IMG/VR virus record: IMGVR_UViG_3300017971_000001
Span: 62,001 to 126,000 of that record
Strand: one strand, 5' to 3'
Length of the DNA: 64,000 bases
Part shown: positions 1 to 60,854 of the stretch, one piece after another
Layout of the letters: each line of letters begins with the position of its first letter
How positions within the stretch are numbered: position 1 is the stretch's first letter
Notes under the pieces: generated by a model
The model's database searches: none
Seen by the model: the letters and a program-made list of their open reading frames with translations, nothing else
What the model was told of the DNA's origin: nothing
Position numbers and translations under genes: made by a program

Positions 1-564
1 CCTGGACGACTCGACCACGGCGATCAGATCCGTGTTGTTGCACGTCTCCTGCACACACTCGACCGCGACCCCCAGCGACTTGAGGTAGATCTCCAGGCTC
101 GCCCTGTCGTTCGACTTGGGAGCAGCCGAGACGATCTCTCCGGTCGCGACCGGATCCGGCAGGATCGCGGGGAGCACGAAGCGCAAATGGACCCACTGCA
201 ACTTCCCGCTCAGTTCGCTGGCCTCCATGAAGAGGTCGTCTAGCTGAATCCCTTCCTTCCAGGCCTTCTCGTCCTCCCCCTTGTTCCAACCGAGGATCAG
301 GTATCGGCCGCTCTCGTCCATGAGCGCCATGGCCTCCGCCATGGTCCCCGGCCCCTCGACGACCGCGCCTTCGGCCCTCAGTTCCCCAGCGACCCGGATT
401 GCCTCGACGATCGTTGGAGCCTTCTCGCAACGAGGGATCAGATCGACCGGCGCGCGATCAACGGTCGCCTTCGCGTCCTTCAGGTTCATTCCCGTCAGCC
501 TGCGCACGGCCTTGATCACAGCGATCTTACGCAAGCCGGGATTCTTGAGCACCAGAGAGATCAT
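1..564 (-). CDS. Ribosomal protein bL12 (L7/L12) C-terminal-domain-like protein with C-terminal extension; partial, runs off window edge
   Basis: Manual translation from ATG 564: MISLVLKNPGLRKIAVIKAVRRLTGMNLKDAKATVDRAP...ELRAEGAVVE matches the bL12 CTD signature KI.VIK.VR.LTG..LK.AK..V..AP...L...GA.VE. Absent from the ORF track because there is no stop in the window. Confidence 0.8.
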   Translation of the reverse strand, partial: MISLVLKNPGLRKIAVIKAVRRLTGMNLKDAKATVDRAPVDLIPRCEKAPTIVEAIRVAGELRAEGAVVEGPGTMAEAMALMDESGRYLILGWNKGEDEKAWKEGIQLDDLFMEASELSGKLQWVHLRFVLPAILPDPVATGEIVSAAPKSNDRASLEIYLKSLGVAVECVQETCNNTDLIAVVESSR

Positions 565-6899: not shown

Positions 6900-9800
6900 T
6901 CAACGAACACCTCTGACGCACAAGAACCCTCGATCCGTTCCACGTCCGTGCGTCCTGATTTGCCCTCTGCCGAGGAATCTGGCAGGAATGAATCCGCAGG
7001 AAATGGAGCGCGCTAGACCACGAGACGTTCGCTGACCTCTGAATCCAGAGCTCGCGAACAAGCGGAAGCGTCGGCGGTGCCTGATCACGCGACAACCATA
7101 TCGAATGTCTCGGACATGTTCACGGAAAACATTGGTTCAACACGATTCCGCGAGACCCGACGATTCCGCGAGACCCGGCGACGCCGTTTCCGATCGAGCG
7201 ACTGAAACCGCACCCCTGACTGGCCCGTATGCTGAATTTCCTGAGAAGGGGATTCAAAGCGGACCCCTGCCCGGCTCCGACATAACGTCTAAGTCCATGC
7301 GATCGGCCCCGCTGTGTCCCAGGGGTCACTTGGACGTGAAACATGAAGTTGATACTCCGCTTCCTGCGATTCAGCGCAACTCCCTCACCGTCTTGCTCTG
7401 TCGGCCCTGAGTCCCCGCCCGCGGTTCCGCTGGAAACCGCAGCCATGGCGGGCCGTTCGATACAGCCTCCGGACCGGGTTTCCTGGTATTCCAAAGTCGT
7501 TCGTCGACCCCGATCCGATCGAGCAGCCCAGGCCCCTGGCGCGAACTCTTAGCCGCCTGGGCAGAGGCCCTCTCGTCATGCTTCTACAGCGCCTTCTTCT
7601 CACACCCACGAGGAGCACGTCCAACCTGAGGACCGAAGGAGGCCGAGTCCGTAAACTCGATTCTGAGCCCTGCCGAACATGGTGATCTCGATTGGCCAGC
7701 GACCCGTCAGGTCCGCATTCCCGACCGACCGGAGCAATCCGCGACCGCGAGTCCACTTCCTCAGGCGCCTCCTCCTCAAAACGGATCGAGTCCTAAGCCC
7801 CAGCTGAAGAAGTCGCCTCGGCCCTCAGGGCTTCTCATTCCGCTTCCTTGCGATCGGTGAAGGCCGAACGACCCGCCGAGCCTCAGTCCATACCCCATGA
7901 GCGCGGGGGTCAAGTTGGTCCGCAGGCGCCTGGATCGACTCATGTTCGTCCTGACCAGAGGCCAACATTTCTGAACAGGCCCGATCCAAACGACGCCGTC
8001 TGACCCGTCCCCAGAGATCGGTTGAAGAGGAATGTGTATCCAGGCGTTGGGCAGCCCCAGCCGTGACCTAGCTTCAGCCCGAACCCGAAAAAGTCATAGC
8101 GCGCCGCTCCGCGACACCTCCTACGATTCATTGAACAGGCCTCGAAAGCGGTGAGATCCAAAGCCCGAGACTCGACCCAGCCCGAGGCCGGCGGCGATTC
8201 GGACCAGAGTCCCGCCCCAGTTGGAGTAGGTGAAGCCCCATTCGCAGTGCGTGCCGGCGCCGAGGTTTCCCAGGCGTGCCGCGCCCTTATTTCTTCTCCG
8301 GCGCTTCATTCTGATCCCTGGCCGCACCCGAGGTCGTGATCAAGTCCAATTCCGGAGTGAAAGCCGACTGCCCGCGAGGGGACCTCCATGCACCCAGACC
8401 CGAATCCCCAGGCTCTATCTCGTCCGTAGCCCATGGCGCAGTCGCGTCCGATACCTCCGGGCGACAGTGAGAACCGCGCCCGTCGTCGGCGATTCCTCAT
8501 TGACCGCGCACCCCTCGCCCATAGTCGCAAAGCAGTCCGAGCCCGTAGAACGTTACCGTCGCCGCGACGCCCGGCGAGAGGGGAAGGCCTTCACCGAAGG
8601 CGACGCGAAGCCCAGTGGCTGCGTGGCGCCTCTGGCCGCGGCCTCTAATTGGCCCCCTGCAGACCACGACTTTTCGCCGGAGCCGCCGCGTCAACTTTCG
8701 ATCCCCTCGCCGCGGTAGAAAGCCAGTCCGTATCCCCACCACACTTTCTTGGTGCCCCTTGAGACACTTCCTCCCCCGACCGCAATTCTGAAGGGCCCTT
8801 TGATCCCGCCGACTCCCCAGCACTTCCAGGACCCATACCCGCAACGCATTCCATGAATGGAGAATAGATCGTCGGTCTTGGTGAAGAGGCCGCCCTGCGC
8901 TCGCCGTCGTCTTTTCATGGAACAGGAATCTCGAAAGTTAGAGTGATCACGCGCGGAGGCGCGATCCCGTTCGCAATCAGGGTCATGGTCGTCGTGCAGC
9001 GCGCGTTCCCCTGGCCGTTGCCTGCGAAGTATCGCAGTCCGCTCGAACCAGGAGCGAACACAGGGAACTTGCTGAAGCCTAGGCCGACTCTGCGGAGCTC
9101 GAGCCCGAGCGCTCGGAAGTGCCAGCCGGAGTGAATGCGGCGTCGTCTGCGGTTCATGGGAGAACGTAGTCTCCGAATCCGTAGTAGCGCGTCGTCTTCC
9201 AGTCAATCAGGGACCCCTTCTCGGACAAGGCGTCCGCGACCGCTGCGGGGGAAGGGTCGCTCGGAACGTAAAAAGTGACGAGCGGGGACTCCGCAGCCGG
9301 CCTCGCAGTCAACTCCCGTTCCTTCAGACTCGCCCTGGCCCGATCCGTCGAAGCTCCTGAGGCCCAGGCCTATGTTTTCCCATAGCCCGTAGCCAGAGGT
9401 CGAATAGGTTGCGTCGAGCCGAACTCGCCGTCGCCTCACCATGAGGAATCGCTCACGATCGCCATGCGGAGGTCAACGACACAGCGCTGAAGCCCGCAGC
9501 CCATAGAGAAAGCCCGAGAGGAACCAACAGCCCGCTCGGTGGACCTGCCCAAGAACCCGAGGCAGGTGTATTCCGCGTTCGACAGACCGCGGCCTAGTCC
9601 TTTGCCAATCCCAATGGACCAGCGCCTTTGGACCGCAGCAGCAATTCTGGATCTTCTCTTCATATCGACCAACACGTTTCGCGCATAAGGCCCCGCCCGA
9701 TCATGGACTCGCAGCCCGAGCTCAACTCGTCGGGGAAAAAGCAGGCGCGTCCGAACGTCAACCCAAATAGACTCCCTCCCGACCCGAAGGAGCTTCGCTG

Positions 9801-22028: not shown

Positions 22029-22065
22029 GCCTATGGGCAGGTAAATGGGCCCCCGCCGGGACCTG

Positions 22066-22524
22066 TTAGAACTTCTCGGGGACCTCAGGATCGTAGGGAG
22101 GAATGTGGAGGCCTCGCCTACGGAGCTCCTCTTTCGCTCGGTCAAACTGCTCGACCTCGACGTTGGACTTCGACTCGACAAGGGCAATGCCCGAGGTCCG
22201 GGCGATCAGGCCATTGCGAGCGCTCAGCGGATCCTCGACGCGAGCGTACGCCCAGCGATCGGCTAGGAAGATCTTGTTCCCGTTCTCGTCGGTGAACCCT
22301 AGCACGCCATGCATGCTGCGAGTGGGTCCGCTCTTCGTCCACCAGGTCGCAGCAGCGCTCCCTCGGTCGTCGTATCGAACGACGAGCCAAAGATCGCCCT
22401 GAAGAGACCCGCTCTCAGAGGCGGCTTTTCCTTCGTTCACGCAAGCAAGCGTGATCACGTAAACGCAGGTCAAGAACACGAGGAGCGCAAAGGCAGAGAG
22501 AACGATTCGATCGTTCTTGCTCAC
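22066..22524 (-). CDS. Membrane-anchored protein (paralogue of 22853-23308)
   Basis: N-terminal TM; shared VVRY.D.G...A.W.TK...F.D..G....L...Y....DP. Confidence 0.7.
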   Translation of the reverse strand: MSKNDRIVLSAFALLVFLTCVYVITLACVNEGKAASESGSLQGDLWLVVRYDDRGSAAATWWTKSGPTRSMHGVLGFTDENGNKIFLADRWAYARVEDPLSARNGLIARTSGIALVESKSNVEVEQFDRAKEELRRRGLHIPPYDPEVPEKF

Positions 22525-32471: not shown

Positions 32472-33232
32472 ACCCCGAATCCTCTCTCGAGGAACTGCCC
32501 GCGACCAAATTCGCGGCGTGTCCACCTGTTACCCCACCTGTCGGAAAACCTAACAACCGACAGCGACCCAAATCCAAAACGGAGACCCTCGCCGTAGCGA
32601 AAGCCTTGTCCGAACCCATTGGTCCGAACCCCCCAGCACGCCTGGTAACGCCGGCGCCTGATCACCGATTCCCGCCCGCAGCGCTGCCGACACCGACGCC
32701 GCATGCCTTGCCAAGTCCCCCCCGAGACGGAAGCGAGTTGCTGCCGCTGCCGGAGATCCTGCTCTGAGCGACTCCGAACCTCGCTCCGTTGCCAGCCGAG
32801 AACTCGACTGCGACCAAGGCCAGCCTCCTCCTCCGCGTTCTCTTCATGCGTCCTCGAAGTGCCGAATGACGAAGTGGAATCCGAGGACCCCGAAGAGGAA
32901 GCCGAACGATCGGACCGAGGCCGGAAGCACGCAGAGCATGAGCACGCACCACCAGGCTCCGATCGTGCAGATCGTGTTCACCGCTTGTTTCTGCTGAGCG
33001 GTCACGGCGAAGACCACTGCGACGAGAATTGACGGTGAACAAGGCCGCCGCCGTCGCGATAACGAAAGCTCGTGATCCCCAGGGTCCGGTACATGCCCCT
33101 GCCTCGAATGCGCGGGAAGGCCAGCTTGGCGAAGCGCCGCCCTCCAGAAGAAAAGTTGAGTCCAGATCCAATCCTCCGCCGGTGGTCCAGGGAGTACCAG
33201 AAGAAAAGCATTCGGCGCCGCCTCCTCAGCAT
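32468..33232 (-). other. Cluster F: 3 Arg-leader / Gly-rich peptide genes
   Basis: Members (-): 33002-33232, 32662-32847, 32468-32665; small TM ORF 32844-32981 in between. Confidence 0.8.
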
Positions 33233-50356: not shown

Positions 50357-51160
50357 CTAACTAACTTCGGCCCCCCATGAAACCCATCCCTTCCTTTTTT
50401 TTCTGGAAAATAGCTCGAGCCTTCGCTCCATGTGAGGCCAGAGCTCTTCAATCTTCTCGTAAATGCTTTCCGGTTTCTCGCTGTGCGCGCCGACAGGGCC
50501 CTCAAGCTCAGCGCTCACGGACGTCGCCCCCTTTGCCCGGGGCGCGCTCCCCTTGATCGCCAGGGCTACAGGCTCGTAGCAACTCCTGCTATAGAAGCCC
50601 ATGCCGACGTAAAGCTTCCCGCTCTTGTAGGTCTTCCTCCAATTGAAAAGCTGGCCGGTCTTGAACTGGAAACCCCAGCTTTCAATCACCTTGATCGCTT
50701 CGGGGGTCTTGGGGCCGGTGTACCACATGATCAGCACGCAGTTTTCAGCGGCCAGAGAGTCCACAGGAAGCGCGGCGATCTCCTCCACCGTCATGCAGTA
50801 GTACTGGTCCTGGGCCTTACCCTGCTCCCCCACGCGCTTGTATTTCCAAGGCGGGTCAACAAGGATCAGATTGAACAGGCCCTTCCTGACATGCTTCTTC
50901 CTGAGGGCTCGCAGGCTATCGACAGTCTCCAGGAACGAGATAGGCTCGATCTTCTTGGTCCCGAAGTTCTTGGAGTCCTTCGGTTTCTTACGAGCCTTGC
51001 CCTTGACCTCGCCTTCCTTGGGCTCCCCCTTTGCCTTCTTGCGAGACTTGGAGGCGCTCTTCTTAGGAGGTTCGGAGGCGGACGGCTCCCCCTCGGAGCA
51101 CGTCCTGCGATTGTGTCCCTCCCCGCCGCACTTGCCGCACCTGACGATTCGCTTCTTCAT
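50357..51160 (-). CDS. MT-A70 family N6-adenine methyltransferase with N-terminal zinc knuckle
   Basis: LILVDPPWKY, Y.CMTVEEIAALPV, WGF..KT...W.K, HSEKPE, LELFSR; N-terminal CGKCGGEGHNRRTC. Confidence 0.92.
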   Translation of the reverse strand: MKKRIVRCGKCGGEGHNRRTCSEGEPSASEPPKKSASKSRKKAKGEPKEGEVKGKARKKPKDSKNFGTKKIEPISFLETVDSLRALRKKHVRKGLFNLILVDPPWKYKRVGEQGKAQDQYYCMTVEEIAALPVDSLAAENCVLIMWYTGPKTPEAIKVIESWGFQFKTGQLFNWRKTYKSGKLYVGMGFYSRSCYEPVALAIKGSAPRAKGATSVSAELEGPVGAHSEKPESIYEKIEELWPHMERRLELFSRKKRKGWVSWGAEVS

Positions 51161-51194
51161 GCCGGAAGGATAGCTACTGGCTCCGACAAGGGCC

Positions 51195-51937
51195 GTGGCA
51201 GGTAAATAGGCCCCTGTCATGAAGGCCGCATGGCGGAGCGAAAGCAGCGTGACAGGTAAATAGGCCCCTGCCAGGACTTGTTGCTCGAGTCCGCCGCCGA
51301 CCAAGCCCTCGGGCTGCTCAGTGTGACAGGTAAATAGGCCCCTGCCAGGACTTGTTGCTTGGGGTCAGCCGCGGAGCAAAGGGAGTCTGCTGTCGTAGCA
51401 GGTAAATAGGCCCCTGCCAGGACTTGTTGCGACCTCGCCCCTCGTCGAGGTCGTCGGCGAGGTGGCAGGTAAATAGGCCCCTGCCAGGACTTGTTGCCAC
51501 CCGCCGCCTCAAGGGCGGCTCTCGGTATCAGAAGTGGCAGGTAAATAGGCCCCTGCCAGGACTTGTTGCCAGAAAAATCGCCTCCTACATATAGGGGGTC
51601 GCCCTCAAGTGGCAGGTAAATAGGCCCCTGCCAGGACTTGGTGTGTCATGCAGCACTTCTTGGACGCGATCAAGGTTGCCCGCGTGGCAGGTAAATAGGC
51701 CCCTGCCAGGACTTGTTGCCGGCACGATCCCGCTCGCGACGCTGGAGTCGTGGCAGGTAAATAGGCCCCTGCCAGGACTTGTTGCCCGCTGGGCAGAGGA
51801 GGCAAAGGTGGCCTCGGGTCTCGTGGCAGGTAAATAGGCCCCTGCCAGGACTTGTTGCGGCGCTCAATCGCGATCGCAACGCGCCGCCCACCGACCCCTC
51901 TGTGGCAGATAAATAGACCCCTGCCAGGACTTGTTGC
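51195..51937 (-). CRISPR. CRISPR array: 10 full 36-nt repeats plus 1 degenerate terminal repeat; 9 full spacers of 30-43 nt
   Basis: Plus-strand consensus GTGGCAGGTAAATAGGCCCCTGCCAGGACTTGTTGC at 51249, 51323, 51395, 51462, 51534, 51609, 51684, 51750, 51823, 51902; degenerate copy at 51195. Transcribed sense GCAACAAGUCCUGGCAGG-GGCCUAUUUA-CCUGCCAC forms a 3' hairpin ending in AC. Confidence 0.98.
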
Positions 51938-51947
51938 GCCGTGCCTC

Positions 51948-54071
51948 CTAAGCCTCTTCGCCGCCTTCGTTTTTGCGCTTCATTTCGAGCGCTCGCTTTT
52001 TCGCAATCGTCTTCCTCCTTCGCTTGTTGGGCTTTTCGCTGTAAGTCCACACCTCGTCCGGCTCGAGCGCCGGTCGATCCCAGTTCACCTTCGCGCCGCT
52101 CGCGGCGAGGAGGTTGCGAGACGCGTTCACGTCTCGATTCCAGGTCTCTCCACAAGAGCAGGTGAACACCTGCGCAGAGCCGAGGCTGCGGTTCCGCTTC
52201 CCGCAAGACCAGCAGGTCTGGCTCGTGTAGGCCGGGTTCAGCGTGTCGATATCCTCGAAGAAGACGTTCTGAAGCGACTTCTTGAGAACGCTCAGCGCCG
52301 CGTGCCTCTTGTTCTTGTTGATCCGGTCCTGCTTCTTGTTGTCGCCCGCCTTGTTTCGCTCTTGCATGTGCGCGAGGTTCATTTCCTCGATCACGCAGTT
52401 CTTGTAGCGCCTCCCCATGTCGCGGGCGAATCGACGGTAAAGGTCCCGCCTGCTCCCCTGCAGCTGGCCGCGGAGAGGATCGCGCCAATCGGGCCCGAGG
52501 TGGAGTTGGCGGCCACGCCAGTGCCAGAGCCAGTCGAGGCAGCTGTCCTCGTCCTGGTCGCGCCACTTCTTGACGAGCTTGGACAGCTTCTTCGGGCTCC
52601 TGAACTGGTGAAGGTTCTTGAACTCCTTCCGGAGGCCTTTCGGAATACAGCCCCGCCCTTCGACCTTGAAGTAAGCGATCAGGTTATCGACCGCTTCGTT
52701 GAAGTCCTTCTTCACGAGGCTCTGGAGGTTCTCCACCTGCTTGGCCTCTCGAAGCCACCAGCAAGGCAAAGCGACCTTGCCCTCCCTGCCGTCGCTCCCG
52801 GAGAACGTCGCGACGACGATCGAGCCGTTGTCGTAGCGCCAGCCGACGTCGATCGCGACGGTGCCTTCCTTCGCTCGGTCCGGACGGGGTCCGACGTCAG
52901 CAAGGCTCAGCTGAACCGACCACTTCAGGCGACGCCCCTCCTTCTTTCGAACGACCTTGGCGTGAGTGATTCGGACTCCCTCAGGGATCTCGCGCTTCAT
53001 GAAGAACGGGATTCGAGCCCAGACGGGCTTCTTCCCCTCACTCCTTACGCGGAGGTAGAGGATCGCGTCACCCCTCTTGGCCGCGCGGTCCCTTCCCGCC
53101 ACCCAGACGCCAGTCGGATACCGAACGATTCGGGCATGGCCCTGGCCCAGGTCGCCGCTGAAGATTACCTCAGGGGCCTGCTTCTCCCGCGACTGGTAAG
53201 TCTGGCCACCAATAATTCCAGAGCCGTCCCAACTCTTGAACTTCGGCGGGGGGCCCTTCCGGTGTTGACGGAGTGCCTCGTGACGCGTGTTCCTGGTGTT
53301 CCAGTGTAGTTCAGGAAACCGCTCGCGTCCCTCCTTGGCGGCGTCGCTCTTCGCGTCGTCGAAAGCCTTCTTGTCGTAGGAGTCCAACTCGCGCGCCTCT
53401 TTGCATATTTTTTGCCGATCCTCCCAGGCATTCTTGAGCTTTTTGTGAAGCGCGGAGATCTCCGCCCTCTCTTCCGGGGTGAGCGTATCGTCTCGATTCT
53501 TCGAGTTGCGCTTGCGCTGCTCTTCGTGAACAGCATGAAGCGCCTTCTTGATCGCTGCGTACTTCGCGTCGGCCTCAAGGATCTCGTCCTTCAACTCGGT
53601 CTTGAGCATGAACTTCATGTCAAGGTCGCGCATGCTGTGGTCGATCTCCACAGTGTCGTTGCGCATGCGCTGACTGTGGAAGAAGTGATCGTCGACGAAC
53701 TCGACGCCCTCGAGGAGCAGACCTTCTTCATGCGCACGCCGCCGCATTTCGGCGGAGATCAGGTCTTTGTTGACGCGGTCGCCTTGCTCAGCAAGCTGGC
53801 CCAGGAATCGGTGCTCATTCTCGAACCCGAGGGGAAGGGTTCGGTTCGCCGGGTACTTGTAGACCCGAACCCCCGTGTCCTTGTACTTGATACCCTTTTC
53901 CTTGTCCTTCTCCTTGGCCTTCTTCTTGGCCTTGTTCCGCTTGCGCATGCGCGCACGCTGGGCCTCGCGCAACTCTTCCTTGCTGCGCTTCTTGCGCCCG
54001 CCACGCTTCTTGGTCTTGCTCTGAGTCGTCACGACCCCCCCCCTCCTCACTTGAGCTCCCATCATACTCAC
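51948..54071 (-). CDS. cas12m: Type V CRISPR effector, Cas12m (V-M / V-U1, C2c4)-like; likely start GTG 54032
   Basis: RVYKY, LHWNT.N, F..WDGSG.IG.Q, TVAIDVGWR (RuvC-I), QFRSPKKL, RRDLYRRFA, VIEEMNL (RuvC-II), TSQTCWSCG...CSCG..WNRDVNASRNL (Zn finger, RuvC-III); directly upstream of the array. Confidence 0.82.
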   Translation of the reverse strand: MSMMGAQVRRGGVVTTQSKTKKRGGRKKRSKEELREAQRARMRKRNKAKKKAKEKDKEKGIKYKDTGVRVYKYPANRTLPLGFENEHRFLGQLAEQGDRVNKDLISAEMRRRAHEEGLLLEGVEFVDDHFFHSQRMRNDTVEIDHSMRDLDMKFMLKTELKDEILEADAKYAAIKKALHAVHEEQRKRNSKNRDDTLTPEERAEISALHKKLKNAWEDRQKICKEARELDSYDKKAFDDAKSDAAKEGRERFPELHWNTRNTRHEALRQHRKGPPPKFKSWDGSGIIGGQTYQSREKQAPEVIFSGDLGQGHARIVRYPTGVWVAGRDRAAKRGDAILYLRVRSEGKKPVWARIPFFMKREIPEGVRITHAKVVRKKEGRRLKWSVQLSLADVGPRPDRAKEGTVAIDVGWRYDNGSIVVATFSGSDGREGKVALPCWWLREAKQVENLQSLVKKDFNEAVDNLIAYFKVEGRGCIPKGLRKEFKNLHQFRSPKKLSKLVKKWRDQDEDSCLDWLWHWRGRQLHLGPDWRDPLRGQLQGSRRDLYRRFARDMGRRYKNCVIEEMNLAHMQERNKAGDNKKQDRINKNKRHAALSVLKKSLQNVFFEDIDTLNPAYTSQTCWSCGKRNRSLGSAQVFTCSCGETWNRDVNASRNLLAASGAKVNWDRPALEPDEVWTYSEKPNKRRRKTIAKKRALEMKRKNEGGEEA

Positions 54072-54104: not shown

Positions 54105-54488
54105 CTAAGACGCTTCGAGCTTCGCCAGCCCCTCGCGGAGCATGGCGCGAAACTCGTCCTCGAGCTTCATGGCGCGGTGAGCCTGGCCGAGCATGCTGCG
54201 CACGGACGTCAGGTCCTTCGGCTTGGGGTAGTCGCCCTGGCGGTTCATGAAGCTGTAGGCCTCCTCGATCACGGAGAGCGACTTCTGCTCCTTCTCGGTC
54301 AGCGGAAGAGGCTCGACGCCTTCGACCAGGTTGTGGCCGCGGACGACCTGGCGCACGTACTGGTTGCCGGTCCACACGTAGGCAGCCACGATCGTCTGGT
54401 TGCCCTCGACGCGCAGGCGCTCGATCTCGTCACGAACGGCCTGCTGCTTGCGGGCCTTGTTGGCCAACTTGTTCCTCTTCGCGCTCAA
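54105..54488 (-). CDS. Hypothetical protein
   Basis: Coupled ORF, high GC3. Confidence 0.7.
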   Translation of the reverse strand: MSAKRNKLANKARKQQAVRDEIERLRVEGNQTIVAAYVWTGNQYVRQVVRGHNLVEGVEPLPLTEKEQKSLSVIEEAYSFMNRQGDYPKPKDLTSVRSMLGQAHRAMKLEDEFRAMLREGLAKLEAS

Positions 54489-54844
54489 CGGGGCGCCTCC
54501 TTCTTGGTCACGATCTTTCGGTAAAGGCCCCCGGCTCCGGGTTCCTTGCTGCAGTAAAGGTGAGAGGCGATCTCGCCCCAGAGGCTCGCCTGAACGCGAA
54601 CCCAGCCCGGCTGACTCTCCTCGTCGACGAGCGCCTGCCCCGTCTCCGCTCCGTCCACGACGACCCTCGCGCCGGACTCTTCGAGGTCGCGGATCAACTC
54701 GTGGATCGTGTCGCAGGGAGGGATCTCGACAGGCGCTTGGTCCGCCAACTTCTTCGCCAGGACGAGCGAGAGGCCGAGGTGCTGGCGTAGGTCCTTGATC
54801 ACCGAGATCTTTCGGTGGCCCGTGCTCTCGAGGACAACTTTCAT
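54485..54844 (-). CDS. Ribosomal protein bL12 C-terminal-domain-like protein
   Basis: MKVVLESTGHRKISVIKDLRQHLGLSLVLAKKLADQAPVEI.....IRDLEESGARV. Confidence 0.8.
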   Translation of the reverse strand: MKVVLESTGHRKISVIKDLRQHLGLSLVLAKKLADQAPVEIPPCDTIHELIRDLEESGARVVVDGAETGQALVDEESQPGWVRVQASLWGEIASHLYCSKEPGAGGLYRKIVTKKEAPR

Positions 54845-54917
54845 AGGGACAACACTCCGATCAGGAGGATCAAACCAAGGCAGGCGGCCTGGAACAACCG
54901 CCACTCTTCCTCAGGCG

Positions 54918-55705: not shown

Positions 55706-56436
55706 GCGTAAGCCTGTCGCTGTCGCTCGATCTCGCCAGCCACGTCAGGAGTCGGGTGACCCGGCGCCTTAATGAACTTGCCCGTCACGGGGTCCTTGCT
55801 GGCCGTTGCGATCTTGAGCAGGTTGTTCTCGTCCACGAGCTCGAGCAGCGGGCGGTTCTTCAGGCCGCAGGCGCTCATGGTCCCGATCGTCACGACCGAG
55901 ATATCGACGCAACCGTCCGCGATCTCGGTCAGGTCGGGATCGTGGGTGGCTGCGAACTCGAGACCGTCGAACTCGACCTTCGTCCCCTCGGCCCGCACCG
56001 TCACGCCGAGGGCCTCGATCGTCTCCAGGCACTCCTCGAGAATCAGGCGCGCCCGAAGCGTCCGCGTGTGGGCGTCGGGGACCGTCGGCACCTGAGGCAC
56101 TTCTTGGCCGAACCCGTACATCATGTGTTCGACGCGAATCTGGTGATTCGTCTGGTCGCGGTGCTTCGTTTCGACCTCGACGGGCGCGGCCTCAGCGATC
56201 GCGTCGTTGTAGGTGTCCTCACCGAGCCCGTCGAGCTCAGCCAAGCGACGGAGGCCATACCAGACCGCCTTGCCGACCTGCTCACGCAGGACACCCTTCT
56301 TGTTCCAGCGCGAGAGGTATTTGCCCACGTTCCACAGCAGCGCGTCCCGCTCGAGTCCCCAGGCCTTCAGGACCTTGATCGTCTCGTAGGCGTTCTCCTT
56401 GCCGCCGTAGTGATCCGGGTGATCGACCGAGCTCAC
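55702..56436 (-). CDS. DUF3310 domain fused to a MazG-like nucleotide pyrophosphohydrolase
   Basis: VDHPDHY...ETI...NVGKY.SR..KK......KAVWY, then LRARLILEECLE...EIADGCVDI.VV..G...V.ENN..K...GKFIK. Confidence 0.85.
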   Translation of the reverse strand: MSSVDHPDHYGGKENAYETIKVLKAWGLERDALLWNVGKYLSRWNKKGVLREQVGKAVWYGLRRLAELDGLGEDTYNDAIAEAAPVEVETKHRDQTNHQIRVEHMMYGFGQEVPQVPTVPDAHTRTLRARLILEECLETIEALGVTVRAEGTKVEFDGLEFAATHDPDLTEIADGCVDISVVTIGTMSACGLKNRPLLELVDENNLLKIATASKDPVTGKFIKAPGHPTPDVAGEIERQRQAYA

Positions 56437-56645
56437 AGGCCCTCCTTCACGTTGTTGATCAGGACCGAGGTCGCCTGCGGCCACTGCTCACGCGCCTGGT
56501 AGCTGGCGTGCGCCGCCGCGGCCTTGGAGTCGTCGGCGAAGACGTCGTAAGACTGCCACCAGCGGGAGTCGCGACTCAGCCGACCCTTCTCGCCCATTTC
56601 CTGGTGGCGGCACTCGACACGGACACGAAACATGGATCCAGACAC
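56433..56645 (-). CDS. Hypothetical protein
   Basis: AAGGAGG SD just downstream of an orphan CRISPR repeat. Confidence 0.65.
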   Translation of the reverse strand: MSGSMFRVRVECRHQEMGEKGRLSRDSRWWQSYDVFADDSKAAAAHASYQAREQWPQATSVLINNVKEGL

Positions 56646-56667
56646 AGCGACCTCCTTGTTGAGGAAA

Positions 56668-56742
56668 GTGGCAGGTAATAGGCCCCTGCCAGGAATTGTT
56701 GCCGAGAATGGCAGGCAAATAGGCCCTTGTTGGACTTACTGC
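56668..56742 (-). repeat. Two degenerate orphan CRISPR repeats 5 nt apart
   Basis: GTGGCAGGTAATAGGCCCCTGCCAGGAATTGTTGC (56668-56702) and ATGGCAGGCAAATAGGCCCTTGTTGGACTTACTGC (56708-56742). Confidence 0.85.
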
Positions 56743-56804
56743 CACCCGCCGCACCAACCTAACAACCCCAGCCGACAAGTTCACGGAAAACTAAAGGTGG
56801 CAAG

Positions 56805-57344
56805 GTGAAAACCTGGATCTTGTCCGACCGGAGTCGTATCCTGGCCCCAGCAACGGAACGGGACTGGCAAGGGAGGACCGTGGACGGAATCGGAACGATC
56901 AATCACCTTTTGCAGCCGCCCCCGAAGCGAACTCGCCCCCGCCGTTGCAGCGTCGAAGGGTGCTCGAAGCCGACGAGGGAGAACAAGCCGGTCTGTACCG
57001 ACCATGTGCTTGAGCTCCCCTATGCACGCCGGGTTGCAGAAATGGCCCAGCGGATCGAGAAAGAGCACAAAATGCTCCTCCGGGGCCGGCGCCCGAACCA
57101 AGAATGGCTCCTGGTTGAGGACGCGCTGATCTCGATCGCCTTCCAGGAAGAGGAGGAGGTCCCGACGGTCAAGATCTGCAGGACGTGCGACGTCCCTCCC
57201 AAGCTTGCGCTCAAGCTGGCGCGGGCCGGCGGGCTTAGCTACCGAGCTCGGAGGCGGAGTCACGTCTTCAACGTGAAGGACGCGCGCAAGATCGTGATCG
57301 CGCGAATCATTGGCCGTGACGGGCCCAGGGCGCGCAGGTCGTAA
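56805..57344 (+). CDS. Zn-finger protein (paralogue of 43963-44418)
   Basis: RCSVEGC.K.T...KPVCTDH....PYA.RV. Confidence 0.65.
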   Translation: MKTWILSDRSRILAPATERDWQGRTVDGIGTINHLLQPPPKRTRPRRCSVEGCSKPTRENKPVCTDHVLELPYARRVAEMAQRIEKEHKMLLRGRRPNQEWLLVEDALISIAFQEEEEVPTVKICRTCDVPPKLALKLARAGGLSYRARRRSHVFNVKDARKIVIARIIGRDGPRARRS

Positions 57345-58353: not shown

Positions 58354-58426
58354 GCTGGAGTAGCTCAACCGGCAGAGCACTCGCCTTGTAAGCGAACGGC
58401 TGCGGGTTCGACCCCCGCCTCCAGCT
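58354..58426 (+). tRNA. tRNA-Thr(TGT)
   Basis: Acceptor GCTGGAG/CTCCAGC, D arm TAGCTCAACCGGCAGAGC, anticodon loop CTTGTAA, T loop GTTCGAC; no encoded CCA. Confidence 0.92.
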
Positions 58427-58584: not shown

Positions 58585-58656
58585 GGCCCCGTCGACTAGT
58601 GGTTAGGTCACCAGCCTTTCAAGCTGGCTGCGCGGGTTCGAGTCCCGTCGGGGTCA
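58585..58656 (+). tRNA. tRNA-Glu(TTC)
   Basis: Acceptor GGCCCCG/CGGGGTC, anticodon arm CCAGC-CTTTCAA-GCTGG, T loop GTTCGAG. Confidence 0.92.
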
Positions 58657-60818: not shown

Positions 60819-60854
60819 GCGGCAGGTAAATAGGCCCCTGCTAGGACTTGCTGC
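60819..60854 (-). repeat. Solitary CRISPR repeat
   Basis: GCGGCAGGTAAATAGGCCCCTGCTAGGACTTGCTGC, 33/36 identical to the array consensus. Confidence 0.9.

What the first reader, a model, noticed from the sequence alone, without database searches (positions are those of the whole stretch)
56646..56804. Degenerate double CRISPR repeat in a divergent promoter gap, directly upstream of an RBS
Seen: two decayed repeats 5 nt apart, 4.7 kb from the array and in the same orientation. In transcript sense the better copy (hairpin intact) is followed immediately by TTTCCTCAACAAGGAGG and the start of the gene run that leads down to cas12. The flank CACCCGCCGC next to the second copy is identical to the 10 nt flanking the array repeat at 51462-51497. 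Inference: a Cas12-processed site in the leader of its own transcription unit (autoregulation), a crRNA-like regulator, or the relic of an array duplication.
Basis: partly seen in the sequence, partly recalled or inferred. Interest (0 to 1): 0.6.

Follow-up and report, generated by a model that had tools for sequence, protein, structure and literature searches.

The report
Array-derived repeat pair in cas12m leader
A 245-kb phage that carries its own DNA-binding CRISPR enzyme (Cas12m) has a two-repeat piece of its own CRISPR array in front of the first gene of the cas12m operon; the piece clearly came from the array, its closest relative lacks it, and a feedback role is plausible but untested.

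Summary
Window 56668-56702 and 56708-56742 are two copies of the 36-nt array repeat, 5 nt apart and in array orientation. They lie in the 159-nt gap between divergent genes. The better copy ends 10 nt before AAGGAGG, and a GTG start follows.

- **System:** the cas gene is a Cas12m (type V-M), an enzyme family that binds DNA and processes its own pre-crRNA. The genome is a complete 245-kb phage without cas1.
- **Origin:** the pair comes from the phage's own array. The order and flanks match repeat-spacer-repeat-spacer at 51395-51510, with one spacer cut down to 5 nt.
- **Conservation:** the pair is missing from the only relative found (about 83% nt identity). That relative has a 77-aa zinc-ribbon gene at the same place.
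- **Other copies:** three more solitary repeats exist in this phage, each just upstream of a gene in the sense direction. One of them is cleanly absent from the relative.
- **Targets:** no second-site target for the sequence after the repeat was found in the phage or in the public collections searched.
- **Expression:** no RNA data could be obtained.

Best reading: a lineage-specific array fragment whose intact copy probably still binds Cas12m in the operon leader, which would give feedback. A neutral relic is nearly as likely. It is a new variant of the known solitary-repeat and crRNA-like elements, of moderate interest.

The parts
56668..56702 (-). Copy 1: near-intact solitary CRISPR repeat (35 nt) with the hairpin kept
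   Evidence: nhmmer E 4e-10. It has 2 differences from the array consensus. Its hairpin folds at -12.6 kcal/mol, like the array repeat.
56703..56707 (-). 5-nt remnant between the two copies. Four of these bases equal the first 4 nt of array spacer 51431-51461 (minus sense).
   Evidence: Alignment of the pair with array 51395-51533; spacer list.
56708..56742 (-). Copy 2: degenerate repeat whose 5' arm of the hairpin is destroyed
   Evidence: nhmmer E 2e-3. It has 8 differences, 4 of them in the 5' arm. The canonical hairpin does not form.
56743..56755 (-). Spacer-derived flank: 10/10 identical to the end of array spacer 51498-51533 that abuts repeat 51462-51497
   Evidence: (family D4)
56646..56667 (-). 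22 nt between copy 1 and the start codon, holding the ribosome-binding site AAGGAGG (56651-56657). This stretch and the first four codons of the ORF (34 nt in all, 56634-56667) have no counterpart in the relative.
56433..56645 (-). First gene of the operon (70 aa, GTG start), 94% identical to the second gene of the relative's operon
56756..56804 (.). Part of the divergent gap that is conserved in the relative. It presumably holds both promoters, including a -10-like TGTTAGGTT at 56756-56764 (minus sense).
   Evidence: Alignment with L002/L003; motif count. The promoter assignment is inference: the sigma-70 scan found nothing.
56805..57344 (+). Divergent gene (179 aa, no known family), conserved as 175 aa in the relative
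51948..54071 (-). cas12m (type V-M/V-U1 effector) with RuvC motifs of the D-E-D type
   Evidence: PDB Cas12m 23vw_A, E 3.5e-43; PADLOC Cas12u1, 3e-74 over the whole profile; Pfam TNB domain.
51195..51937 (-). CRISPR array: 11 repeats of 36 nt and 10 spacers of 18-43 nt, read from the cas12m side towards the methylase gene
50357..51160 (-). MT-A70 DNA methyltransferase gene. Its ATG lies 34 nt after the terminal degenerate repeat of the array.
60819..60854 (-). Second solitary repeat locus in the window (3 differences). An AT-richer stretch and a 67-aa ORF follow it.
22034..22069 (-). Third solitary repeat locus (8 differences, hairpin kept through a G-U pair). It fills the gap between two co-directional genes and ends 5 nt before an ATG.

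Best explanation
The element is a fragment of the phage's own type V-M CRISPR array, ordered as spacer end, repeat, spacer remnant, repeat. It was copied by recombination or duplication into the 5' leader of the operon that ends in cas12m, and then decayed unevenly.

The upstream copy (copy 2) lost its hairpin. The downstream copy (copy 1) is almost intact and sits right before the ribosome-binding site of the first gene.

The likely mechanism is this. The operon transcript starts in the conserved part of the gap and therefore carries copy 1. Cas12m recognises the repeat hairpin as it does in pre-crRNA and cuts upstream of it. It then keeps the hairpin plus the next ~20 nt as a pseudo-guide, and that stretch includes the AAGGAGG site and nearly reaches the start codon. 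This would lower translation or alter the stability of the operon mRNA when free Cas12m is abundant, which is negative feedback.

- **Shown:** the identity and origin of the repeats, their position, Cas12m family membership, and absence from the relative.
- **Inferred:** transcription through the element, Cas12m binding and cleavage, and any effect on expression.
For: - **Origin:** the pair aligns with array units 51395-51510, with a 10/10 flank identity and a 4-nt match on the other side.
- **Copy 1 as substrate:** it has 2 differences from the consensus and the same hairpin energy as the array repeat.
- **Uneven decay:** copy 1 has 2 changes and copy 2 has 8, with 4 of the 8 in the 5' arm. 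This fits selection or gene conversion on copy 1 only.
- **Position:** in the relative, the -10-like element is followed within about 25 nt by the ribosome-binding site and start codon. In the window the repeat pair lies between these two.
- **One transcription unit:** no minus-strand terminator-like site lies between the gap and the methylase gene.
- **Enzyme:** it is Cas12m. Cas12m proteins cut pre-crRNA within the repeat and need no tracrRNA (PMC11013384, PMC10442227).
- **Other solitary repeats:** three more loci each lie 5-41 nt upstream of a gene start in the sense direction.
- **Hairpin conservation:** stem changes in array and solitary repeats are mostly G-U-preserving, six preserving against two breaking outside copy 2 and the terminal repeat.
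Against: - The pair is absent from the only relative found, which has a 77-aa gene at the same place. A second solitary repeat is also absent there. The elements are therefore recent or dispensable.
- There is no RNA evidence of any kind.
- The whole-leader fold is not more stable than shuffles (z -0.76), and its minimum-energy structure does not keep the copy-1 hairpin.
- The hairpin statistics rest on very few changes and show no compensatory pairs.
- Once one allows that insertions inside genes are purged, four loci all in sense orientation is only about 1 in 16 (my estimate).
- The G8T change and the shorter loop of copy 1 could abolish Cas12m binding.
Confidence: 0.4

Rival explanations
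1. Neutral relic. A piece of the array was duplicated or recombined into the gap when the head of the operon was rearranged, and it is simply decaying. Copy 1 looks better only by chance or through gene conversion with the array 4.7 kb away.
For: - The pair is array-derived with spacer remnants.
- It is absent from the relative.
- The array is recombinationally unstable: near-identical strains carry 11, 9 or 3 repeats.
- There is no target, no conserved structure and no cas1.
- The difference between 2 and 8 changes is only marginally significant (about p 0.04-0.09, my estimate).
Against: - Copy 1 sits exactly between the promoter region and the ribosome-binding site, in the sense direction.
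- If it is transcribed, an intact repeat is hard for the cognate Cas12m to ignore.
- Three other solitary repeats in the same phage are also sense-oriented just upstream of genes.
- Changes in copy 2 cluster in one hairpin arm.
Confidence: 0.33
2. CreR-type crRNA-like regulator. Copy 1 plus the following ~20 nt is processed into a guide. That guide leads the DNA-binding Cas12m to a partly complementary, PAM-flanked site in a promoter of the phage, the host or a competing phage, and represses it.
For: - The architecture of repeat handle plus downstream sequence is what a Cas12 guide needs.
- V-A CreR elements lie just upstream of cas12a and repress its promoter (bioRxiv 10.1101/2023.03.10.532045).
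- Cas12m acts by binding, so partial or full matches would silence without damage (PMC11013384).
Against: - No site in the 245-kb genome matches the pseudo-spacer beyond shuffled controls: best 15/20, and no seed of 11/12 or better other than the locus itself.
- Nothing matched in the relative's contigs.
- Only chance-level matches (E about 2) turned up in the phage records, and only the phage's own contig in IMG/VR.
- The PAM is unknown and the host is unknown, so host targets could not be tested.
Confidence: 0.07
3. Decoy or sponge (Racr-like). Solitary repeats are transcribed as RNAs that soak up Cas12m. The Cas12m could be the phage's own, tuning the free pool, or that of a host or rival phage with a related V-M system.
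For: - Solitary repeat units in viral genomes are the hallmark of RNA anti-CRISPRs (PMC10651486).
- There are five repeat units at four loci in this phage.
- Shmakov et al. proposed the same role for V-A solitary repeats (PMC10120712).
Against: - The repeats match the phage's own array.
- No array with this repeat exists in 185,579 species genomes, in the JGI metagenome contigs or in IMG/VR apart from this phage.
- The units sit inside mRNA leaders rather than forming separate small genes with their own terminators.
Confidence: 0.1
4. Recombination boundary. The pair and the array are direct repeats that bracket the whole cas12m operon. They serve, or once served, as sites for excision, capture or exchange of the cassette between phage genomes.
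For: - Both are in direct orientation and flank 56645-51948.
- Strain variants show repeat-to-repeat deletions in the array.
- The gene content of this operon differs from the relative exactly at the pair and just upstream of cas12m.
- A similar idea was raised for Francisella V-A remnants (PMC10120712).
Against: - No variant lacking the operon was seen among the strain-level contigs.
- This would be a consequence rather than a selected function.
- It does not explain the other solitary repeats.
Confidence: 0.1

Closest known systems
Standalone repeat units and mini-arrays inside CRISPR-cas loci (Shmakov et al. 2023, PMC10120712), especially the solitary repeats upstream of cas12a in type V-A loci
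   Same: It is a repeat-like sequence outside the array, in an intergenic region upstream of the effector operon. It matches the cognate repeat, and no spacer-like target is evident, as in most V-A cases.
   Different: The system is V-M and phage-encoded. The element is demonstrably a copy of two adjacent array units with spacer remnants. It lies inside the mRNA leader next to the ribosome-binding site. It is not conserved in the closest related locus, whereas conservation was the selection criterion in that study.
CreR, the Cas-regulating crRNA-like RNA of type V-A (Moraxella bovoculi; bioRxiv 10.1101/2023.03.10.532045)
   Same: There is one good repeat-like unit with the crRNA hairpin and one strongly degenerate unit. 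The location is just upstream of the cas operon, and autoregulation of a Cas12 is the proposed outcome.
   Different: CreR works through a pseudo-spacer that partly matches a PAM-flanked site at the cas12a promoter, and no such site was found here. The order of the good and degenerate units is reversed. The mechanism proposed here acts on the RNA leader, not on promoter DNA.
RNA anti-CRISPRs (Racrs) and viral crRNA-like RNAs (Cracrs) (PMC10651486; bioRxiv 10.1101/2024.10.29.618823)
   Same: They are solitary CRISPR repeats carried by a virus.
   Different: Those mimic the host's repeats in order to disable host Cas proteins. Here the repeats are those of the phage's own array and effector.
Type V-M CRISPR-Cas12m (Wu et al. 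2022; PMC10442227; PMC11013384), and a phage-encoded Cas12m reported in a myxophage (bioRxiv 10.64898/2026.09.14.751636)
   Same: The effector family is the same. The repeat is 36 nt with a 3' hairpin, there are no adaptation genes, and the array lies next to the effector gene.
   Different: The protein is longer (about 700 aa, with a lysine-rich N-terminal extension). The array sits between cas12m and a methyltransferase gene. Solitary repeats are dispersed in the genome, which was not described for those systems.

Membership tests
Standalone repeat unit / mini-array of a CRISPR-cas locus | Sequence similarity to the cognate array repeat, outside the array | tested here: met
   nhmmer E 4e-10 (copy 1) and 2e-3 (copy 2) over the whole genome; alignment.
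Standalone repeat unit / mini-array of a CRISPR-cas locus | [quoted passage not shown] | tested here: not met
   The pair is absent from L002/L003 (Cas12m 79% identical, syntenic operon). It is present unchanged only in strains that are 99.7-99.99% identical.
CreR/CreA-type crRNA-like regulator | Repeat-like unit that keeps the crRNA handle and hairpin | tested here: met
   The copy 1 hairpin equals that of the array repeat.
CreR/CreA-type crRNA-like regulator | Pseudo-spacer partly complementary (PAM-proximal) to a site at a cas or cargo promoter | tested here: not met
   The best second site scores 15/20, the same as shuffles. No seed of 11/12 or better occurs elsewhere in the genome. Host targets and the PAM could not be tested.
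CreR/CreA-type crRNA-like regulator | Cas-dependent repression of the target promoter | not testable with these tools
   This needs a reporter assay with and without Cas12m.
RNA anti-CRISPR (Racr) | Viral solitary repeat that mimics the repeat of a host CRISPR-Cas system | tested here: inconclusive
   The repeat equals the phage's own array. No bacterial or archaeal species genome holds an array with this repeat core. The host is unknown.
Virus-borne mini-array (repeat-spacer-repeat aimed at related viruses) | A full-length spacer between two repeats that matches other viruses | tested here: not met
   Only 5 nt lie between the copies. The 34 nt after copy 1 match nothing in the relative's contigs, only chance-level hits in the phage records, and only the phage's own contig in IMG/VR.
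Type V-M (Cas12m) CRISPR-Cas system | Effector homologous to Cas12m / Cas12u1 over its whole length | tested here: met
   PADLOC Cas12u1, 3.2e-74, profile positions 4-530 of 533; PDB Cas12m 23vw_A, 3.5e-43, residues 122-658.
Type V-M (Cas12m) CRISPR-Cas system | Adjacent array of ~36-nt repeats with a 3' stem-loop, no tracrRNA, and usually no adaptation genes | tested here: met
   Array at 51195-51937; hairpin; no Cas1 in the complete genome. A tracrRNA was not searched for specifically.
Type V-M (Cas12m) CRISPR-Cas system | Binds target DNA without cutting, and processes its own pre-crRNA | not testable with these tools
   The RuvC motifs read D-E-D in the alignment. Characterised D-E-D Cas12m proteins still only bind (PMC11013384).

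The most novel reading that the evidence does not exclude
This phage has placed single copies of its CRISPR repeat into the 5' leaders of at least four of its own transcription units, and a fifth gene start (the methylase) follows the terminal repeat of the array itself. Cas12m would then double as an RNA-binding and RNA-processing factor that sets the 5' ends and translation of a small set of phage mRNAs. A related possibility is that the starts of the phage's own genes become guides against relatives that lack the repeat. The clean presence or absence of exactly one repeat unit at an otherwise ~95% identical site would then point to an unknown way of inserting or excising single repeats without cas1.
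Probability: 0.12. Interest if true: 0.85.

Novelty: new variant of a known kind. Interest (0 to 1): 0.5.

Why it matters
Solitary CRISPR repeats near cas genes are known as transcriptional regulators (CreR, CreA, long tracrRNA) or as viral decoys (Racr). If this element works as proposed, it would be a natural case of a Cas12 enzyme controlling its own operon by binding a repeat in the mRNA leader and covering the ribosome-binding site. That is an RNA-level feedback loop needing no DNA target, in a phage-borne, binding-only V-M system. It would also show how array fragments can be recruited as regulatory parts. If it is only a relic, it still documents how unstable and recombinogenic an array is in a phage without cas1.

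Tried and rejected
**Searches that found nothing**
- **RNA evidence:** No reads were laid, and I did not try another route.
- **Protospacers for the 10 array spacers:**
  - own genome: only chance-level matches;
  - relative's contigs: one 14-nt match that does not extend, 17/39;
  - phage and plasmid collections: no match.
  The PAM therefore stays unknown.
- **Targets of the five pseudo-spacers in the phage genome:** none above shuffles. An exact 11-nt seed for the 60819 unit at genome 43645-43664 is within chance (about 0.6 expected over five queries, my estimate).
- **The sequence after copy 1:** blastn with 38 nt (56630-56667) gave only chance-level matches in the phage records. The exact 20-nt search in IMG/VR found only the phage's own contig.
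- **Repeat core in public collections:** IMG/VR and the JGI metagenomes returned only this phage plus one chance hit in a methionyl-tRNA synthetase-like gene. The species genomes returned nine single, scattered hits and no array.
- **More relatives around the other solitary repeats:** none in IMG/VR. The protein searches returned only strain-level variants.

**Tests that gave no support**
- **Leader structure:** not more stable than shuffles. An alternative pairing of the copy-2 3' arm with the copy-1 5' arm is possible on paper but has no support.
- **Sigma-70 promoter scan of the gap:** nothing.
- **Rfam:** no family for the repeats.
- **Generality:** the distant Cas12m-like phage Rctr197k has no solitary copies of its repeat outside the array. 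Its upstream small array uses an unrelated repeat, so it is not an analogue.
- **Mobility enzymes:** no Y1 (IS200/REP-type) transposase and no Cas1 in the genome.

Full report
**1. The observation.**
- The array lies at window 51195-51937: 11 repeats of 36 nt and spacers of 18-43 nt.
- The hairpin is at the 3' end of the repeat only when the minus strand is read, and the cas gene (51948-54071) is on the minus strand. crRNA sense is therefore minus.
- A profile of the array repeats searched over the whole genome finds 56668-56702 at E 4e-10 and 56708-56742 at E 2e-3, both in array orientation and 5 nt apart.
- Copy 1 differs from the consensus by one substitution and a 1-nt loop deletion. It folds into the same 7-bp hairpin (-12.6 against -12.5 kcal/mol).
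- Copy 2 has 8 differences, 4 of them in the 5' arm, and no longer forms that hairpin.
- In minus sense copy 1 is followed by 10 nt, AAGGAGG, 5 nt and a GTG start.
- The 10-nt flank identity with the array (56743-56752 = 51498-51507) is real.

All points of the description are confirmed.

**2. The system.**
- The window belongs to a single 245,276-bp virus record with direct terminal repeats, rated complete.
- The cas protein matches a solved Cas12m at E 3.5e-43 over residues 122-658, and the PADLOC Cas12u1 profile at 3e-74 over its full length.
- The three RuvC motifs read D-E-D in the alignment.
- The genome has no Cas1 and no Y1 transposase.
- Published work shows that Cas12m proteins, including D-E-D ones, bind DNA and block transcription rather than cut. 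They also cleave their own pre-crRNA inside the repeat without a tracrRNA (PMC11013384, PMC10442227).
- A phage-encoded Cas12m has been reported recently (bioRxiv 10.64898/2026.09.14.751636), so that part is not new.
- No minus-strand terminator-like site lies between the gap and the MT-A70 methylase gene that follows the array. One transcription unit from the gap through cas12m, the array and the methylase gene is therefore possible.

**3. Origin of the pair.**
- Aligned with the array, the pair reproduces two neighbouring units: repeat 51395, spacer 51431-51461, repeat 51462, spacer 51498-51533.
- The outer spacer is kept for 10 identical bases plus a few more.
- The inner spacer is reduced to 5 nt, of which 4 equal its first bases.
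- The pair is therefore a copy of an array segment that later lost most of one spacer.
- The array itself is unstable. Contigs 99.7-99.99% identical to this genome carry 11, 9 or 3 repeats, the differences being clean losses of internal units. The pair is unchanged in all of them.

**4. Comparison with the closest relative.**
- Two Logan contigs (L002, L003) carry a Cas12m 79% identical, in a syntenic operon of about 83% nucleotide identity.
- Their divergent gap is 85 nt and has no repeat.
- The alignment is about 90% identical up to a -10-like element and then breaks.
- Where the window has roughly 125 nt (spacer end, copy 2, 5 nt, copy 1, 34 nt with the ribosome-binding site and start), the relative has a short leader and a 77-aa zinc-ribbon gene.
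- Homology resumes inside the first codons of the 70-aa gene.
- Without an outgroup, I cannot say whether the window gained the pair or the relative lost it.

**5. Other solitary repeats.** The same profile finds three further loci.
- **Window 60819-60854:** 3 differences.
- **Window 22034-22069:** 8 differences. It fills the gap between two co-directional genes.
- **Genome 241870-241905 (outside the window):** 2 differences. It lies after a terminator-like hairpin and 41 nt before a gene start.

All are in the sense direction of the next gene, 5-41 nt from its start. The terminal degenerate repeat of the array is likewise 34 nt before the methylase ATG.

The relative's contig L018 covers the third locus. 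The flanks are about 95% identical and exactly the repeat unit is missing, with one base in its place.

Across all 11 units, 92% of hairpin positions pair. Six one-sided changes keep pairing through G-U, and there are no compensatory changes, so this is only weak evidence for selection on structure. The neighbouring genes have no known families.

**6. What it does.** I looked for the hallmark of CreR-type regulators, a partly matching target for the sequence after the repeat. I found none in the phage genome, in the relative or in the public collections searched. The host is unknown and the PAM could not be derived because no spacer has a match. No array with this repeat exists in the searched genomes, so mimicry of a host system has no support.

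What remains is position:
- an almost intact repeat lies between the conserved promoter region and the ribosome-binding site of the operon that encodes the enzyme recognising that repeat;
- if it is transcribed, binding and cleavage by Cas12m are the expected default;
- the ~20 nt the enzyme would hold as a guide cover the ribosome-binding site.

This gives an RNA-level negative feedback. I rate it 0.4, with a neutral relic at 0.33. The leader as a whole shows no significant structure, and RNA data could not be obtained.

**7. Known relatives and novelty.** The element belongs to the broad class of standalone repeat units and crRNA-like elements of CRISPR-cas loci (PMC10120712; bioRxiv 10.1101/2023.03.10.532045). 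It fails two tests, conservation in related loci and a promoter target. It also differs from viral Racr and Cracr elements, because it copies the phage's own repeat (PMC10651486; bioRxiv 10.1101/2024.10.29.618823). I rate it a new variant of a known kind. The most novel reading not excluded is a Cas12m-dependent set of repeat-tagged phage mRNA leaders, with single-repeat gain or loss by an unknown route.

Noticed in passing
window 60819-60854; window 22034-22069; genome 241870-241905 (locus L017 2371-2406): Three more solitary copies of the array repeat, each just upstream of a gene in the sense direction. The one at genome 241870 is cleanly absent (exactly one repeat unit) from the relative's contig L018, whose flanks are about 95% identical.
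   Followed up: partly
loci L019, L020, L021 (strain-level variants of window 50000-70500): Genomes 99.7-99.99% identical carry arrays of 9, 11 and 3 repeats. The differences are clean losses of internal repeat-spacer units, so the array shrinks by repeat-to-repeat recombination in a phage without cas1.
   Followed up: yes
position 4 of the repeat in window 56708-56742, 60819-60854 and genome 241870-241905: Three of the five solitary units share an A-to-G change at repeat position 4. No array repeat of this phage has it, nor does the relative's repeat. This could mean common descent of the solitary units or a shared constraint.
   Followed up: no
window 56756-56764 (minus), genome 241861-241869 (plus), window 32547-32555 (minus): The motif TGNTARGTT, a possible extended -10, occurs only three times in the genome. 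Two of the three lie 0 and 13 nt upstream of solitary repeats. The motif was defined after seeing these two sites, so its weight is low.
   Followed up: partly
window 50357-51230: The array is followed directly, on the same strand, by an MT-A70 DNA methyltransferase gene. The terminal degenerate repeat ends 34 nt before its ATG, so the methylase mRNA may be released from the array transcript.
   Followed up: no
window 54485-54904 (minus), and window about 310-561 (minus): A homologue of the C-terminal domain of ribosomal protein L7/L12 sits inside the cas12m operon. A second, 43% identical copy lies elsewhere in the genome.
   Followed up: no
L002 3689-3922, 6759-7118 and 7111-7890: The relative's operon has three genes that the window lacks: a 77-aa zinc-ribbon gene where the repeat pair sits, and a CoiA-like nuclease gene plus a 259-aa gene just upstream of cas12m.
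   Followed up: partly
L023 (KX853510.1, Virus Rctr197k) 196-450 and 7414-8928: A distant Cas12m-like gene in a 197-kb phage is followed by a 1.5-kb array. A second small array with an unrelated 36-nt repeat lies 5 kb upstream, at the head of the same gene run. No solitary copies of the main repeat occur elsewhere in that genome.
   Followed up: partly
window 58354-58426 and 58585-58656 (plus): Two tRNA genes lie in the divergent gene block next to the gap.
   Followed up: no
window 51231-51901: Spacer lengths range from 18 to 43 nt, unusually wide for one array. None has a match in any collection searched.
   Followed up: partly
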